Assembly: GCA_965644295.1 (NCBI GenBank)
Contig: CBFFRP010000210.1
Location: forward strand, 124,001-188,000
Origin: Paraphysomonas bandaiensis
Taxonomy: Eukaryota; Protista; Chrysophyceae
DNA length: 64,000 bases
Reading direction: 5' to 3'
The position numbers were made by a program, and so were the translations under genes. A model generated the notes under the pieces. The model saw only the letters and a list, made by a program, of their open reading frames with translations. It ran no database searches and had not been told where the DNA came from. Below, one piece after another: positions 32,541 through 38,994 of the stretch (its first letter is position 1; every line of letters starts with the position of its first letter).

Positions 32541-33756
32541 AATATTGTTATATCACAGAGATTGAGTACTACTTATTAAGTAATATTACTGTGGGCTTGC
32601 ATACATATGTGTATGTGTGCAAAGCAATACCCAAGTACAGAAGTACAAAATAATGATTATTATCGTATAATGAATCATGAATAATACTGTCTACAATATC
32701 AACGGCTATTGCTAAATCCCAACAACAATCACCTTCCCTACAGTTTGTATTCCTAACTACATGGTACACGTATACAATACAGTACTGTACTACTAATCAT
32801 ATAATACAGGACAAGTACACGTATATATTCTATATGTAAGTGGATGGTCCTACACTGATCACCATCCTCCTCAGCATTGCCATTTGACTGAGCAGTAGAA
32901 GTATCTTCCTCCTTCAACAGTTCTCTTACAGACTCATCCCGCCAAGGAGTGCGATAGTGCTCCGCTAAATTATGCAGAGTAGAGTATCTCCTAGTATCAC
33001 GTTTCTTTACCGGTTTCGGCAACGTGTCAGGAACTGTAGGTGTTCCTTTCGTAACTGTTTCATCTGCCCCTGGGATATTTTGATCTTCCCTTAAAATCGT
33101 GGGGCTCTGCGCTCTAGAGCCGACAGGTGTACCTCTACGTGAGGCCCGCTCTTCGAGTCGCGTGACTCTGAATGTTAAGTCATCTATTCTCGTATCGAAT
33201 TTCCTTTCCAAGGCATCGAAACGTGAGAGAATGATCTCGAGCATTGAAGGCTCTAAATCATCCTTAACACTGCCTTCAGAACCAGAGTGGCTCTTAGGGC
33301 TACTCCTACCAACGGGAGTTTGCATCTTCCACCTTTTAGCTGCTGTTACACTCTTTAGTTTATATTCCCTCACAGTGTTTATATACTGCGTCTTATGACG
33401 CAGCCTCGTTTGACAACTCAACTGACACCTCACAGTTTGGTTTGATAACCAAGACTATGGCTCGTGATAACGCTAACTACTATCACTGTATAGGAATCAA
33501 GAAAATGAGACCAAAGAAGTGATATTATTACAGGTAAACTTTTGTTTTAATCAACTATACTCGAGTGACTGACTCCCGCGAAGAATCAGCACGCAAACAC
33601 CACCGCTAGTGATGTCAGGTCGCTAGTACCCAAGTAAGGTTAACATAAACAATAACTGAGTCACAACAGAAACATAAAGTATGAAGACAACCGTAGAGCT
33701 GCACACACACAACGTCATCCATGTCACACTGTGTTGCAACACACAACCACAACGCA

Positions 33757-36700
33757 CGTAGAGAAATAAGAGGATGCTCTTTTCAGTTTAGCACTTGAAG
33801 TGACTGTATAAGATATGCATAGAGCACATAGAGGTGCATGGTGTTATGTTATGCAGTGTTTTGTGTACGGCTGTAGACTAGAAGTATAATTTTCTCTTAC
33901 TAACGAGTTCTGTAGTAACTGCGAAGAGAACCTTGCTTTTGACTACCTGTAGTGTAGACTGTGTGAAAAGGCAACGGGGGTATTCCGTCCGTTTATTGAT
34001 CTGTAGCATCCGTGACTTCCGACCGAGTACCGTGTTTTTTCTCTGCGTAAGAGAAAATTATGAAGAAAATGACAAAAGAGAGATATCCCAGATATCCAAG
34101 ATCTGGAAGAAGACAAGAGTCTGACAGTTATGACGCAGTGCCAATGCTAAGATATGGCGCAAAATGTAATCTGCCTATTTTCAAGCAGAAATTGGTGGCC
34201 GAAGCCATGGTGAGGTACGGAGACCTTGCACGACGCTATAAAACTATTAGACGAATATCAAGAGTTCAACGCAACGAAAGATCCACTATCGCTATGGCTT
34301 GCAATAAAAAAGACACACAAGGTGGCGACAAGCTCCAATGTGGGAGCAGTAATGAAAGCGGAGACAAGGCGCAAAATACCAAGAAGTTCGGCAAGGAACT
34401 TTCGAAAGCATCGTGACATACAAGGAGAAATTTGATTATTTACTGGATGCATACAAAGAAATGGACAACGCCAAAAAGTCCGACACCGATGTGGCGATGG
34501 ACTTCTTTAACGGACTAGACGACCACAAAGAATCCAAAAGGGGGCAGAAGAATCCACGGCACAGAGAACAACGGAGGAAACCCCTGATATGTTGGGGGTG
34601 CGGCGAGCCAGGGCACCGACTCAATGAATGCCCTGACAACCAAGACGCAGATGAGAGAAACTGTGCGGTGACCCTAAAGAACGCATTCACATCCGGAGGC
34701 CACCCATTCAGGTGGTACGAGGTACTGCTAGATAATCAGGCGGACGTATCAGTGGTTCACCCTGCATTACTGCACAATATAAGGCCGGCGACCAGGAAAT
34801 GTACCGTGGCAGGACTCTCAGGGCACGCTATGGAGTTACCAAATGTAGGAGATCTGGATCAATTCTTTCCCTGCACAACGGCTGATCATTTACGTGCGAG
34901 TGTGCTATGTCAATCAGATGTGGAGGATATGTACGATGTAACATATGTGCAAGGCAAATCGTATACTGTGCATTTACCTGGTAGAGACCTGGTATTCGCA
35001 AGAAGGAACAAAATGTACGTGGCTGATATGCGAGACTGGGCCACTGGAAACGTACATGTCACAACAGTAGCTGACATGGAAGCGAGGCACTCGAAGGCCG
35101 AAGTGGCTCGAGCACGAGAGGCATGGGACCTAGTCAAGACCTCGGGATTTGACTCTGAGAAAGACGCAATCAACTTAGTCAGTGATGGCAACATAACAGG
35201 ACTGAAACTCACCGCAAGTGACGTACGGAGAGCATTCGAGATATATGGAATCCCATACGAGTCAGTGCGCGGGAAGCACACTCACAAAAAAACGGGGCGC
35301 CAGTACGTAGACACCGCACTGAAATCGGAGATGCAGCGAGAGCAGAGGCTCTACTCAGACATTTTCAGCGTGCGACAGCAGTCCTTTCTTCTCACGATGG
35401 CGGAGCCACTGGGAGTGTCAGTAGTCTCTGCAATACAGAATGAGACAACAGAAGCATTAGGACTCGCACTTCAGGAACACGTTAATCTGCTACGGAGCTA
35501 CGGGTATGTGCCGACCATCGCTTACCTCGACCCACAACCTGGCTTCAAACCACTCCGAGGGCAGATTACAGGGGTGGAGATAGGCGTCGCGGGAGCAGGC
35601 GATCACCTCGACAAAATTGACTCAAAAATACGACGCCTGAAAGAGATGATCAGGAGCATCCATGCAGGACTACCGTGGGATTTACCTGACGCCAATGTGA
35701 AAGATCTGGTACGGTATGCAAACAGCAGGATGAATCTAAGAAGGCCATCCACCAATGGATCAACGGTAGCGCCGCGAGTGGCATTGACAGGGATCAAACG
35801 GAATTTCAAGAAGGAGCTGGCTCTCGCATTCGGTGACTACGTGGAGTGCTACGACCCGAAGGTCAAGAGCAACGACGCAGAGCAGGACCGGACAGAGCCG
35901 TGCATAGCCTTGTATCCTGCAGGCAATGCAAACGGCAGCTGGATTTTCCTGAATCTGAAGACAAACAGATATGTCAGCAGAACAAATTGGAGGAAGATGA
36001 TAACCACGCAGTTGGTGATAGACGCAGTGAACAAGACCGCACAACTAAATCGAAAAAATGCAAGGCACTCACCAGCTATCGCGGACCAACCGGACCAGTG
36101 CGGAGAAGCGCAAGACGACACCACAGAGGGTGGGAATGCAACTGCGACAACAGAGCATGAGAGCAATACCACAGAGATGAGCGAAGACGCACCTGCTACA
36201 AACAATTCGGAATCTGTGGGACAAATGGGCGAGGAAGAGAGCCCGACGACTACCGGCAGTGACGCCCCTAATGAAATAAATACAGAAGACATAACAGGGG
36301 TGGTACACAACACAATGAGCTCACCGTCACTAACAGAAGGAAGGAGAGCAGCTGGTGCTATACGGAAACCAGTGATGTACCGTGCCTATCACACAAGCAT
36401 TACACATGGGTTGAAGGAACACGGTAAGGAGGCATACCTAGCTATAGTGCGGGAGCTGAAACAGTTGCTGCACGACAAGAAGGCCATAGCCCCAGTGCAT
36501 CGGAGTGAGCTGTCAACGACCCAGATCAAAAGGGCGATTCGGTCATTGATGTTTCGAAAAAATCAAGGCCAGACTGGTTGCAAATGGCGCGCAGCAGGAC
36601 AGAAAGCTGTACACCGATACATCGTCGCCTACAGTAGCGATGCAATCAGTATTTGCATGTCTAGCAATAGCAGCGAAAGAGAGACGACATATTTCAACAG

Positions 36701-38248
36701 TGGACATTGGAGGAGCTTACCTGAATGCCGAGATGACCGGAGAAGAAGTCATTATGGAGCTCGAACCGATGCTGGCCGCTATCCTGAAAAAGATGGACCC
36801 AGCCGTACAGCCATACATAGACGAGCGCGGAAGACTGCTAGTACGATTGGACCGGGCCCTATACGGATGTGTTCAGAGCGCGAAATTGTGGTACGATACA
36901 CTGAGGAATTACCTGGAGAGCATCGGCTTTGCAGTCAACCCCGTAGACCAATGCATTTTCAATCGGACCGTCAACGGAAAACAATGCACAGTGACCCTGT
37001 ACGTAGACGACCTATTAGTGATGTCACAGTGCAAGGAAGACACAGAATGGCTAGTGGCAAAACTGAAACAGCAATACGGCGAGGTGAAACACTGTACCGA
37101 CCATGACATGTCGTATATAGGTATGCACATACATGTACAGGACGGGAAGGCAGTGGTATCGATGAGGGCATACCTGGAGGGAGTGCTCGAGGAGACGGGG
37201 ACCACAGGAGGGACGGCTTCCCCGGCAACAGCATCTCTTTTCACCGAGAAGTCCGAGCAGAAATTGGGCAAGAGAGACGCCGCAGAATTCCACACAGTGG
37301 TGGCAAAGCTGCTATACCTGGCAACAAGGGTGAGGCCGGATATTTTGTTGTCTATTGCGTACCTGGCTACTAGGGTGAAGGACCCGACGCAAAATGACAA
37401 GCAGAAGCTGGGGAGAGTGATGAAGTACCTGGCGGTCACCAAGAACCAAGATTTACACCTGCGGATAGGAGATAAGATTCAGGTAAAAGCGTACATTGAC
37501 GCATCATTTGCGACACATCAGGATGGAAAGGGCCATACCGGAGTGGTGGTCAGCGTGGGGGATGCGGCGGTGCTTTGTCGGTCGACAAAGCAGAAACTGG
37601 TCACCAAGGACTCCACTGAGTCGGAATTGGTCGCACTCTCTGACATGCTGCCGTGTGTGATGAAATTGCATGAGTTCCTGTGTGGTCAGGGGTGTATAAT
37701 GGACTCACCTACAATATTCCAGGACAATGCATCTACTCTCAGCCTCGTAACGAAAGGAGGAGGCAAATACCGATCGAAGTATCTACGAGTAAGGCAGGCT
37801 TTAGTCGAAGAACACCATTATAGGGGAGACGTGAAGCTTCAGTACTTACCTACAGGAGAGATGTTGGCTGATGTGCTGACTAAACCCCTACAAGGAAAAT
37901 TGTTTCGTCATTTGATGTGTCGTATCGTCGGAGAAGCATAGACACATCACAGGGGTGCGTAGAGAAATAAGAGGATGTTCTTTTCAGTTTAGTACTTGAA
38001 GTGACTGTATAAGATATGCATAGGGCACATAGAGGTGTATGGTGTTATGTTATGCAGTGTGTATTGTACGGCTGTAGACTAGAAGCATAATTTTCTCTTA
38101 CTAACGAGTTCTGTAGTAACTGCGAAGAGAACCTTGCTTTTGACTACCTGTAGTGTAGACTGTGTGAAAAGGCAACGGGGGTATTCCGTCCGTTTATTGA
38201 TCTGTAGCATCCGTGACTTCCGACCGAGTACCGTGTTTTTTCTCTGCG
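33757..38248 (+). mobile_element. Copia-type (CoDi-like) LTR retrotransposon with CG...CG termini, frameshifted
   Basis: 291-bp LTRs at 33757-34047 and 37958-38248. 5-bp TSD ACGCA. PPT CACAGGGGTG. Domain order: knuckle CWGCGEPGHRLNEC, protease LLDNQA, integrase, RT (DIGGAYL, LYGCVQSA, YVDD), RNase H (DASF, ADVLTKP). Confidence 0.95.
34047..34062 (+). promoter_or_regulatory. Putative self-priming PBS GTAAGAGAAAATTATG overlapping the first ATG
   Basis: Reverse complement of LTR nt 33886-33900 (15/15) and of 3' LTR nt 38086-38101 (16/16). Confidence 0.7.
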
Positions 38249-38994
38249 ACGCAGGCTGTGTCATACAAGCAGTATAACAATATACAGTCATGTCAACGAC
38301 TCTTATCAAATACGGACTTGGAGAATACTAGCTAACGTACACTTTCATATGTAAGACAACACACTCCAGATATTTAAACATGCAACAGAGGAGCCATATA
38401 AGCTCCTGATAAGTAGGAACTTCTCGTTACTTTGCTTTCAGCGTGCAAGTCCAGTACCTTAGGTGCAAGGAGCTTCACTAACGAGTGACAAACGGTGTAC
38501 TGTGGACCCTGTTGTGCATTGTGCTGCATTGAGCACATATTAGCCTTATGAAGGCCATCAAGTGGTACACGTATACCCACAAATGGAGGTAATAGTCTCT
38601 GGATGCACTTTCTACCCGTGACCAGTGTATGCAGGGTCTATGCAATTCTTCCGATGCGGGTGTGAGGGTCTGCAAGGCCTGTCTCTGACATACTGGTCGC
38701 TGAGGCTGGGTTGCCATGCTAGGAGTCCTATTCAATGCTGAAGAGCTGCAGTCTGAGTACTGGTTCAGGTATGAGAGAGGCTTGAGGCTTTAGTCATCGT
38801 GGAACGAGTTCATTACTTCTGTGTTTTGCTATATGAATAATAATAATATGAGTGATTATTTGTTGTCTACTGATGAATGCGTTATTAATAGTTAGTCGCG
38901 CTCTGCGCTTCCAAGCACAACATTGTAGTCTTGAAGTATCACTTGTAGTAACGCACTATAGCCACGTAAGAAGGGCACGCGAGATGCCACGTGG

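What the first reader, a model, noticed from the sequence alone, without database searches (positions are those of the whole stretch)
33757..34062. Copia-type retrotransposon whose PBS is complementary to its own LTR: candidate tRNA-independent self-priming Copia
Seen: right after the 5' LTR there is no TGG or GGTTATG tRNA-type PBS. Instead GTAAGAGAAAATTAT(G) (34047-34062) is the exact reverse complement of LTR nt 33886-33900 (15/15). In the 3' LTR the match is 16/16 (38086-38101), and the one 5'-LTR difference still allows a G-U pair. Known: fold-back self-priming is established for Gypsy Tf1/Tf2 of S. pombe, whereas Copia elements use tRNA ends or half-tRNAs. Inference: this CoDi-like lineage primes minus-strand synthesis from its own 5' RNA. 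I do not know of this being described for Copia.
Basis: partly seen in the sequence, partly recalled or inferred. Interest (0 to 1): 0.9.

Follow-up and report, generated by a model that had tools for sequence, protein, structure and literature searches.

The report
Self-priming Copia retrotransposon in a protist
A young Copia-type jumping gene has, where a tRNA primer site should be, a 16-base stretch that pairs with a site inside its own repeat; eleven related lineages keep this pairing through matched changes, so it most likely primes its own reverse transcription, as already predicted for some plant Copia elements.

Summary
The 16 nt at 34047-34062 (last LTR base plus 15 nt) are the perfect reverse complement of an internal LTR site: 15/15 plus a G-U in the 5' LTR, 16/16 in the 3' LTR.

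It is not chance. Five lineages in this genome and six metagenome relatives (down to 31% polyprotein identity) have different sequences at both sites. Each keeps 9-16 contiguous pairs with its own partner and only 0-7 with the others'. The pairing always starts at the last LTR base. It always ends at, or 1 nt from, the CA of an initiator-like motif. No sampled tRNA matches.

Best reading (about 0.7): Tf1-style self-priming in a true Copia-order element. The integrase fold lies upstream of an RVT_2 reverse transcriptase.

The transcription start was not determined, because only assembled contigs were available. A Ty1 CYC-like 5'-3' cyclization therefore stays open.

- Self-priming is already predicted for plant Copia (TAR lineage, Houba, Osr-1) by this same criterion.
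- The "CoDi/diatom" label is unsupported. The genome shows no light-harvesting genes, and the only named close relative is a Paraphysomonas transcriptome.

First-stage notes flagged the same architecture on at least seven other pieces of this genome. I rate it a new member of a known kind.

The parts
33752..33756 (.). 5' copy of the target-site duplication ACGCA
   Evidence: An empty-site contig in run X1 joins 33751 to 38249 with 5 shared letters.
33757..34047 (+). 5' LTR (291 nt), with termini CGTAGAG...CTCTGCG rather than TG...CA
   Evidence: D1, 97% to the 3' LTR. The boundaries are fixed by 5-bp TSDs in this and other copies.
33885..33900 (+). Putative self-primer: LTR-internal site, proposed first 15-16 nt of the transcript. 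The CA at 33885-33886 is initiator-like; this copy reads TA.
   Evidence: Complementary to 34047-34062 and co-varies with it.
34047..34062 (+). Primer-binding site: last LTR base plus 15 nt, including the gag ATG at 34060-34062
   Evidence: No tRNA complement beyond chance.
34060..37941 (+). gag-pol coding region, broken in this copy into three frames (34060-34416, 34413-37106, 36640-37941). Intact relatives encode one 1441-aa polyprotein.
   Evidence: The order is gag CCHC, then integrase fold, then RVT_2, then an assumed RNase H region (not tested).
37949..37957 (+). Polypurine tract ACAGGGGTG
   Evidence: conserved in front of every 3' LTR.
37958..38248 (+). 3' LTR
38086..38101 (+). 3' LTR copy of the self-primer site (16/16 with the PBS)
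   Evidence: I6.
38249..38253 (.). 3' copy of the target-site duplication ACGCA

Best explanation
This is a recently inserted, now frame-broken copy of a Copia-order LTR retrotransposon family that primes minus-strand DNA synthesis from its own RNA, as Tf1 of S. pombe does.

Proposed mechanism:
1. Transcription starts at the initiator-like CA inside the LTR (33885/33886).
2. The first 15-16 nt of the RNA fold back over R-U5 and pair with the stretch that abuts the LTR end (34047-34062).
3. The element's RNase H cuts the RNA at the end of this duplex.
4. The freed 3' end is extended into U5.

The plus strand copies the primer, so the PBS is re-templated from the LTR site in each cycle. That keeps the two sites matched. 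The gag AUG lies inside the helix, so pairing and translation should exclude each other.

Shown: the anatomy, the pairing, its co-variation, the absence of a tRNA match among those sampled, and the Copia domain order. Inferred: the start site, the cleavage, the primer-templated PBS copying and the translation switch.
For: 1. Perfect 16-nt pairing abuts the LTR end, which is the place where any minus-strand primer must anneal.

2. Co-variation. Lineages A, B, C, D and D' in this genome (polyproteins 59-70% identical) and six metagenome relatives at 31-45% identity carry different sequences at both sites. Each site pairs with its own PBS over 9-16 contiguous bases anchored at the last LTR base, and with other lineages' PBS over only 0-7. 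RNAalifold places the 5'-end:PBS helix in the consensus. Four of its 16 pairs changed on both sides, and no pair is broken except the first two in family C.

3. Copies within this genome. In families A and B, 26 of 26 5'-LTR/PBS pairs are concordant (T with A, or C with G). Sub-lineages D and D' are about 99% identical yet differ at exactly one paired position on both sides.

4. The helix varies from 9 to 16 bp, yet it always ends at or 1 nt from the CA of a YYCA motif. In six relatives the motif is (T/C)TCACTT, close to the stramenopile initiator YCAYTYY, where transcription starts at the A (PMC3599244).

5. The pair formed by the last LTR base also co-varies: G:C in ten lineages and A:T in L048.

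6. tRNAs. 27 distinct tRNAs of the genome give at most 6-8 nt of complement, the same as shuffled PBS sequences. All 99 genomic hits of the 14-mer pattern fall in the spacing expected of LTR sites and PBSs (flanks checked only for the loci fetched) and none overlaps a listed tRNA gene; the reversed-pattern control gave 4 hits.

7. The minimum-free-energy fold of the RNA from the predicted start to the PBS pairs the very 5' end with the PBS in all 8 lineages folded.

8. The same in-silico criterion is the published one for predicting self-priming (PMC6317226).
Against: - The transcription start was not measured. All available runs were assembled contigs, which cannot show RNA ends.
- One polyA-metatranscriptome contig runs from LTR position 30 through the site into gag (record 23). 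This could mean a start further upstream, although an assembly join of the 3' U3-R with the 5' R-U5 explains it as well.
- In the four families of this genome the motif at the site (ACATAAT or CCATAAT) fits the initiator consensus only partly.
- The tRNA set is incomplete: 63 of 2525 candidates were scored, 27 distinct tRNAs were tested, and nuclear initiator-Met and several other isoacceptors are not among those tested.
- 4 of 16 family-D copies carry a mismatched or wobble pair at one position. The pairing therefore tolerates single mismatches, or those copies are recombinants.
- No biochemical evidence exists for any Copia element.
Confidence: 0.7

Rival explanations
1. Ty1 CYC5/CYC3-like cyclization. 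The LTR site lies in U3, upstream of the start site, so it is present only at the 3' end of the genomic RNA. It pairs with the region at the 5' LTR border to circularise the RNA and help initiation or strand transfer. The primer is then something else, or is cut from that 3' copy.
For: The 3' LTR copy pairs 16/16. Ty1, a Copia element, needs such a 5'-3' interaction next to its PBS (PMC3592414). The TSS is unmeasured. A polyA RNA contig carries LTR position 30 contiguous with the site and gag.
Against: In Ty1 the CYC5 box sits beside a true tRNA PBS. Here the paired stretch itself occupies the PBS slot, starts at the last LTR base and runs into the gag ATG, so no room is left for another PBS. 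No tRNA match was found. The upstream end of the helix tracks an initiator-like CA in all eleven lineages, which an internal U3 site would not require. If the primer were cut from the 3' copy, this would still be self-priming.
Confidence: 0.15
2. The helix has another role: a translation switch over the gag AUG, a packaging or dimerisation signal. Priming would then use a host RNA that is not a tRNA, or a short tRNA fragment not sampled here.
For: The gag AUG is inside the helix in families A, B and D. The tRNA sample is incomplete.
Against: The PBS stretches of the eleven lineages share nothing beyond their first one or two bases, so no single host RNA could prime them all. In several relatives the AUG lies outside the helix. 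The helix is anchored exactly at the U5 border, which is a priming constraint rather than a translation constraint.
Confidence: 0.1
3. Chance or low-complexity resemblance. The LTR ends are AGAGAAA/TTTCTCT-rich inverted repeats, and the post-LTR stretch merely resembles them.
For: The post-LTR stretch does resemble the LTR start, and it forms an 8-bp local hairpin with the U5 end.
Against: The match is 16/16, against a next-best of 5-8. Compensatory changes occur in many lineages whose sequences are unrelated.
Confidence: 0.01

Closest known systems
Tf1/Tf2 of Schizosaccharomyces pombe and the Tf1/sushi group (Ty3/gypsy): experimentally shown self-priming
   Same: No tRNA PBS. The stretch after the 5' LTR pairs with a site inside the LTR, proposed to be the first bases of the transcript, and the fold-back encloses R-U5. 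The pairing here is 9-16 nt; Tf1 uses 11 (from my own knowledge of the Levin laboratory's work; Tf1 self-priming is also cited in PMC3592414 and PMC6317226).
   Different: This element has Copia gene order (integrase before RT, RVT_2 type) and no chromodomain was seen. Its LTRs end CG...CG. The pairing includes the last LTR base and, in four families, the gag start codon. Cleavage and priming are not shown.
Plant Ty1/copia TAR lineage (including Houba and Osr-1): self-priming predicted in silico (Neumann et al. 2019, PMC6317226)
   Same: Copia superfamily. The same defining criterion is met: at least 10 bp in the 5' LTR complementary to a region starting 0-5 bp after the LTR.
   Different: The host is a marine protist, not a plant. 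The polyprotein is far from plant Copia: Pfam finds only RVT_2 and a weak zinc knuckle, with no rve, gag_pre-integrs or Retrotran_gag_2, whereas a plant-like Copia hit (P0041) has them all. Whether the trait is shared by descent or arose twice was not tested.
Ty1 CYC5/CYC3 long-range interaction
   Same: A Copia element in which a stretch next to the PBS pairs with a sequence near the RNA 3' end (PMC3592414). The 3' LTR copy here could do the same.
   Different: Ty1 also has a tRNA-iMet PBS. Here the paired stretch is the only candidate PBS.
Fungal GalEa Copia elements with a Conserved Hairpin Site in place of a PBS (PMC5445492)
   Same: Copia elements without a tRNA PBS, with a conserved self-complementary feature at the PBS position.
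   Different: The GalEa feature is a local palindrome or hairpin. Its authors found no LTR sequence complementary to it. Here the partner is 146-170 nt upstream, inside the LTR.

Membership tests
Ty1/copia (Pseudoviridae) LTR retrotransposon | Two LTRs, a 5-bp target-site duplication and a polypurine tract | tested here: met
   An empty-site allele was seen.
Ty1/copia (Pseudoviridae) LTR retrotransposon | Copia-type reverse transcriptase (RVT_2) | tested here: met
   (E 1e-19 to 7e-27).
Ty1/copia (Pseudoviridae) LTR retrotransposon | Integrase encoded upstream of the reverse transcriptase | tested here: met
   Pfam and PDB sequence searches found nothing. The AlphaFold model of residues 530-800 (pLDDT 81.7) matches retroviral integrase core plus C-terminal domain at E 3e-11. 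The RT lies at residues 962-1199.
Tf1-type self-priming (mechanism) | The stretch abutting the 5' LTR is complementary to a sequence in the same LTR, and there is no tRNA PBS | tested here: met
Tf1-type self-priming (mechanism) | The complementary sequence is the very 5' end of the transcript | tested here: inconclusive
   The helix ends at an initiator-like CA in all eleven lineages. No TSS data were available, since only contigs could be laid.
Tf1-type self-priming (mechanism) | RNase H cuts the RNA at the end of the duplex, and the 3' end is extended | not testable with these tools
   Needs analysis of strong-stop cDNA.
Tf1/sushi clade (Ty3/gypsy chromoviruses) | Gypsy gene order (RT before integrase) and RVT_1-type RT | tested here: not met
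   Integrase comes before the RT, and the RT is RVT_2.
Plant TAR-lineage Copia with predicted self-primer | At least 10 bp in the 5' LTR complementary to a region starting 0-5 bp after the LTR | tested here: met
   The pairing is 16 bp and starts at the last LTR base. The criterion is quoted.
Plant TAR-lineage Copia with predicted self-primer | RT/RH/IN phylogeny places the element within TAR | not tested
   No TAR reference sequences were at hand. The Pfam profile differs from plant-like Copia.
tRNA- or half-tRNA-primed Copia | PBS complementary to the 3' end or an internal part of a host tRNA | tested here: not met
   There is no TGG. The best complement among 27 distinct tRNAs is 6-8 nt, the same as for shuffled PBS sequences. 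The tRNA set is incomplete.
CoDi (diatom Copia groups) | Diatom host and RT phylogeny within CoDi | tested here: inconclusive
   No PF00504 hit in the genome. A protein at least 90% identical to a family-D-like polyprotein (P0004) is labelled Paraphysomonas. RT phylogeny against CoDi was not done. The CoDi paper does not describe a PBS.

The most novel reading that the evidence does not exclude
A deep Copia clade of marine heterotrophic stramenopiles, reaching down to 31% polyprotein identity, uses self-priming throughout. In it, one cap-proximal 9-16-bp helix serves as primer and PBS and, in several families, also hides the gag start codon. The same helix would then switch each RNA between messenger and reverse-transcription template. 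The PBS would be re-copied from the primer in every cycle, giving the near-instant 'co-variation' seen between 99%-identical sub-lineages. Self-priming would then be either ancestral in Pseudoviridae or evolved repeatedly.
Probability: 0.35. Interest if true: 0.6.

Novelty: new member of a known kind. Interest (0 to 1): 0.45.

Why it matters
Self-priming has been shown by experiment only for Tf1/Tf2. For Copia elements it is only a prediction, made in plants.

This family offers a very clean natural data set. It has many young copies, often with identical LTRs. It has eleven lineages with different primer/PBS sequences. Two sub-lineages about 99% identical differ by one compensatory pair, and some copies are discordant at that pair.

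If the host can be grown in culture, as the transcriptome match labelled Paraphysomonas hints, three things become directly testable:
- whether a Copia element can self-prime;
- whether the PBS is inherited from the primer;
- whether the helix gates gag translation.

The finding also shows that annotation pipelines which expect tRNA PBSs will mis-score these protist elements.

Tried and rejected
- RNA evidence for the start site. The one run search returned only Logan contigs. Laying four runs gave no ends. Depth differences between the LTR halves were not used, because the tool warns against that.
- Metagenome contigs were examined as possible transcripts with informative 5' ends. All are collapsed-LTR DNA assemblies. 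Two assemblies of one relative (L046, L047) start at the same palindromic base, but their LTR could not be delimited, so they were set aside as weak.
- A recombinant family-D copy (L037) was tried as a way to map the U3/R/U5 borders. There are too few fixed differences.
- A local U5-end:PBS hairpin was considered as the functional structure. It is not conserved in families C and D.
- Pfam and PDB sequence searches for the integrase gave nothing. Fold comparison was needed.
- The Lin and Levin 1997 and Atwood-Moore 2006 papers are not held, so details of Tf1 rest on my own knowledge.
- A complete tRNA catalogue was not obtainable, because only 63 candidates are scored.

Full report
**Anatomy**

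The window holds one complete LTR element.
- The LTRs are 33757-34047 and 37958-38248 (291 nt, 97% identical).
- They are flanked by a 5-bp duplication ACGCA.
- A polypurine tract ACAGGGGTG lies directly before the 3' LTR.
- The LTR termini read CGTAGAG...CTCTGCG, not TG...CA. 5-bp duplications in other copies fix these borders.
- This copy's coding region is broken into three frames. Other copies in the genome carry one open 1441-1464-aa polyprotein, often with 100% identical LTRs, so the family is young.
- A contig in run X1 joins 33751 to 38249 with five shared letters. This is the empty site, so the insertion is polymorphic.

**Is it Copia?**

Pfam finds RVT_2 at residues 962-1199 and a weak CCHC knuckle at 315-329 of the intact polyprotein. 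It finds no integrase, even at a loose threshold. PDB sequence searches are also blank.

An alignment of twelve relatives shows conserved D, D and E/D residues spaced as in an integrase. The AlphaFold model of residues 530-800 (pLDDT 81.7) matches retroviral integrase core plus C-terminal domains at E about 3e-11. The integrase therefore lies before the RT, which is Copia order.

**The observation**

The last LTR base plus the next 15 nt (34047-34062) are the exact reverse complement of 38086-38101 in the 3' LTR (16/16) and of 33886-33900 in the 5' LTR (15/15). Position 33885 is T here and C in nearly all other copies, which gives a G-U pair. The gag ATG (34060) lies inside the stretch. There is no TGG and no half-tRNA motif.

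The genome has at least 44 LTR copies of this family. It also has four related families whose polyproteins are 70%, 60% and 59% identical to this one.

| Lineage | LTR site | Post-LTR stretch | Pairing |
|---|---|---|---|
| A | ..TTTTCTCTTAC | GTAAGAGAAAA.. | 16 nt |
| B | ..TTTCCTCTTAC | GTAAGAGGAAA.. | 16 nt |
| C | TAATTTCTTGTCAC | exact complement | 14 nt |
| D | ..TTTTCTATCAC | GTGATAGAAAA.. | 16 nt |
| D' | the same change as seen between A and B | matched change | 16 nt |

Six metagenome relatives at 31-45% identity have unrelated sequences at both places, yet each pairs with itself over 9, 10, 14, 14, 15 and 15 nt. Two of them (L044, L049) differ by one compensatory pair.

In a cross table, each site pairs with its own PBS over 9-16 contiguous bases and with the other lineages' PBS over 0-7. 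RNAalifold on the five lineages of this genome puts the helix in the consensus. Four of its 16 pairs changed on both sides, and none is broken except the first two in family C.

Genome-wide counts:
- Families A and B show 26 concordant 5'-LTR/PBS pairs and no discordant one.
- Family D, in which D and D' co-exist at about 99% identity, shows 12 concordant pairs and 4 discordant ones. Two of the four are U-G and two are C-A.
- Two environmental contigs repeat the concordant B and D' states.

**Why priming rather than another RNA helix**

- A minus-strand primer must anneal at the U5 border. In all eleven lineages the pairing starts exactly at the last LTR base, and that pair itself co-varies (G:C in ten lineages, A:T in L048).
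- The gag ATG follows within 0-12 nt, so there is no room for a second PBS.
- The eleven PBS stretches share nothing beyond one or two bases, so no common host RNA can serve them.
- Among 40 tRNA loci (27 distinct tRNAs) the best complement is 6-8 nt, the same as for shuffled PBS sequences. The tRNA set is incomplete.
- None of the 99 genomic hits of the 14-mer overlaps a listed tRNA gene. All fall in the spacing expected of LTR sites and PBSs, though their flanks were checked only for the loci fetched.

**Where the RNA starts**

This is the open point. The helix length varies from 9 to 16 bp, yet its upstream end always falls at, or one base from, a CA.
- In six relatives the context is (T/C)TCACTT. 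This fits the stramenopile initiator YCAYTYY, in which transcription starts at the A (PMC3599244).
- In the families of this genome the context is (A/C/T)CATAAT, which is only a partial fit.

Folding the RNA from that CA to just past the PBS pairs the very 5' end with the PBS in all eight lineages folded.

Direct evidence could not be obtained. All runs were assembled contigs. One polyA-RNA contig runs from LTR position 30 through the site into gag, which an assembly join of the 3' U3-R with the 5' R-U5 would also produce. Another short contig begins near 33889. Neither is decisive.

**Mechanism proposed**

By analogy with Tf1 (my own knowledge; Tf1 self-priming is cited in PMC3592414 and PMC6317226):
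1. The capped 5' end folds back and pairs with the PBS.
2. RNase H cuts at the end of the duplex.
3. The new 3' end is extended into U5.
4. After the first strand transfer, the site in both new LTRs is copied from the 3' R.
5. The plus strand copies the primer into the PBS.

This would explain how sub-lineages that are 99% identical can differ by a matched pair. It would also explain why mixed states occur only where two variants co-circulate. These steps are inferences.

**Rivals**

The main rival is a Ty1 CYC5/CYC3-type cyclization (PMC3592414), with the site in U3. It is not excluded without a TSS. It leaves the element without a primer, however, and it does not explain why the helix ends at an initiator-like motif.

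A purely regulatory helix, or an unsampled host RNA as primer, is less likely. Chance is excluded.

**What is known**

- Neumann et al. 2019 (PMC6317226) predict self-priming for 12% of plant LTR elements, including the Ty1/copia TAR lineage, and cite an earlier proposal for Houba and Osr-1. Their criterion is the one met here. The claim that this is undescribed for Copia therefore does not hold.
- Fungal GalEa Copia elements lack a PBS but have a local hairpin with no LTR partner (PMC5445492).
- The CoDi paper says nothing about primer sites.
- No held paper links self-priming with diatom or other protist LTR elements.

**Host**

The genome (62.5 Mb, 669 contigs) gave no hit at all to the light-harvesting family PF00504. 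The only named member of the clusters of near-identical polyproteins is an MMETSP peptide with taxon id 36769, Paraphysomonas, a colourless chrysophyte. The other relatives come from marine metagenomes, including Tara Oceans. The host is probably a heterotrophic stramenopile. This was not proven.

**Verdict**

It is best read as a self-priming Copia lineage of marine protists. That makes it a new member of a known kind: the mechanism is shown in Tf1 and predicted in plant Copia. It carries unusually clear comparative evidence and one decisive measurement still missing, the transcription start. First-stage notes had flagged the same architecture on at least seven other pieces of this genome. 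I confirmed it independently on copies from many contigs.

Noticed in passing
window 34871-34977, 36268-36324, 36386-36437, 36629-36720, 36859-36912, 36997-37173, 37459-37538, 37648-37708, 37783-37849 (minus strand): Contigs of run X1 and of three marine metatranscriptomes skip nine short stretches (52-177 nt) that read GT(A/G)(A/T)G...YAG on the minus strand. This looks like a multiply spliced antisense transcript across the pol region. The spliced antisense RNA has no long ORF (longest 206 aa). An MMETSP peptie of a sister family shows three in-frame gaps (15, 15 and 18 aa) in the RT/RNase H part of pol, the region where the antisense introns cluster.
   Followed up: partly
window 33751/38249: Run X1 holds the empty-site form of this insertion, with 4497 nt skipped and five shared letters equal to the target-site duplication. 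The insertion is therefore polymorphic.
   Followed up: partly
window 33757-33763 and 34041-34047; L031-L042: The LTRs of all four families in this genome end CG...CG instead of the usual TG...CA. The borders are confirmed by 5-bp target-site duplications. The most distant relative examined (L048) has an LTR that ends in CA; its start was not delimited.
   Followed up: partly
L004, L019, L021, L023, L025, L027, L032, L041, L042 (5' flanks): 6 of 21 upstream flanks of family A and B LTRs are (TACA)n-type microsatellite, and several family-D copies are too. This suggests an insertion preference for, or an abundance of, this repeat.
   Followed up: no
polyprotein P0001, residues 360-365 and about 653-669: The only protease-like conserved motif reads LLDNQA, not D-T/S-G. 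The third catalytic position of the integrase-like core appears to be D in the families of this genome and E in the more distant relatives. This is read from alignments only.
   Followed up: no
G000 contigs C263:418404-423159, C290:49618-49797, C440:24275-24454, C463:116607-116786: Four family-D copies combine the LTR-site variant of one sub-lineage with the PBS variant of the other. Two give U-G and two give C-A. In L037 both LTRs carry the same state, so the mix arose before integration.
   Followed up: partly
L045 (metagenome contig, relative at 42% identity): A 361-nt block lies both before the 5' LTR and after the 3' LTR in the same orientation. This may be a tandem or nested arrangement. 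Here the PBS-like stretch starts 4 nt after the repeat border found by BLAST.
   Followed up: no
G000 contig C669 (61.6 kb): A dense cluster of tRNA genes suggests an organelle genome. The nuclear genome gave no hit to the light-harvesting family PF00504.
   Followed up: no
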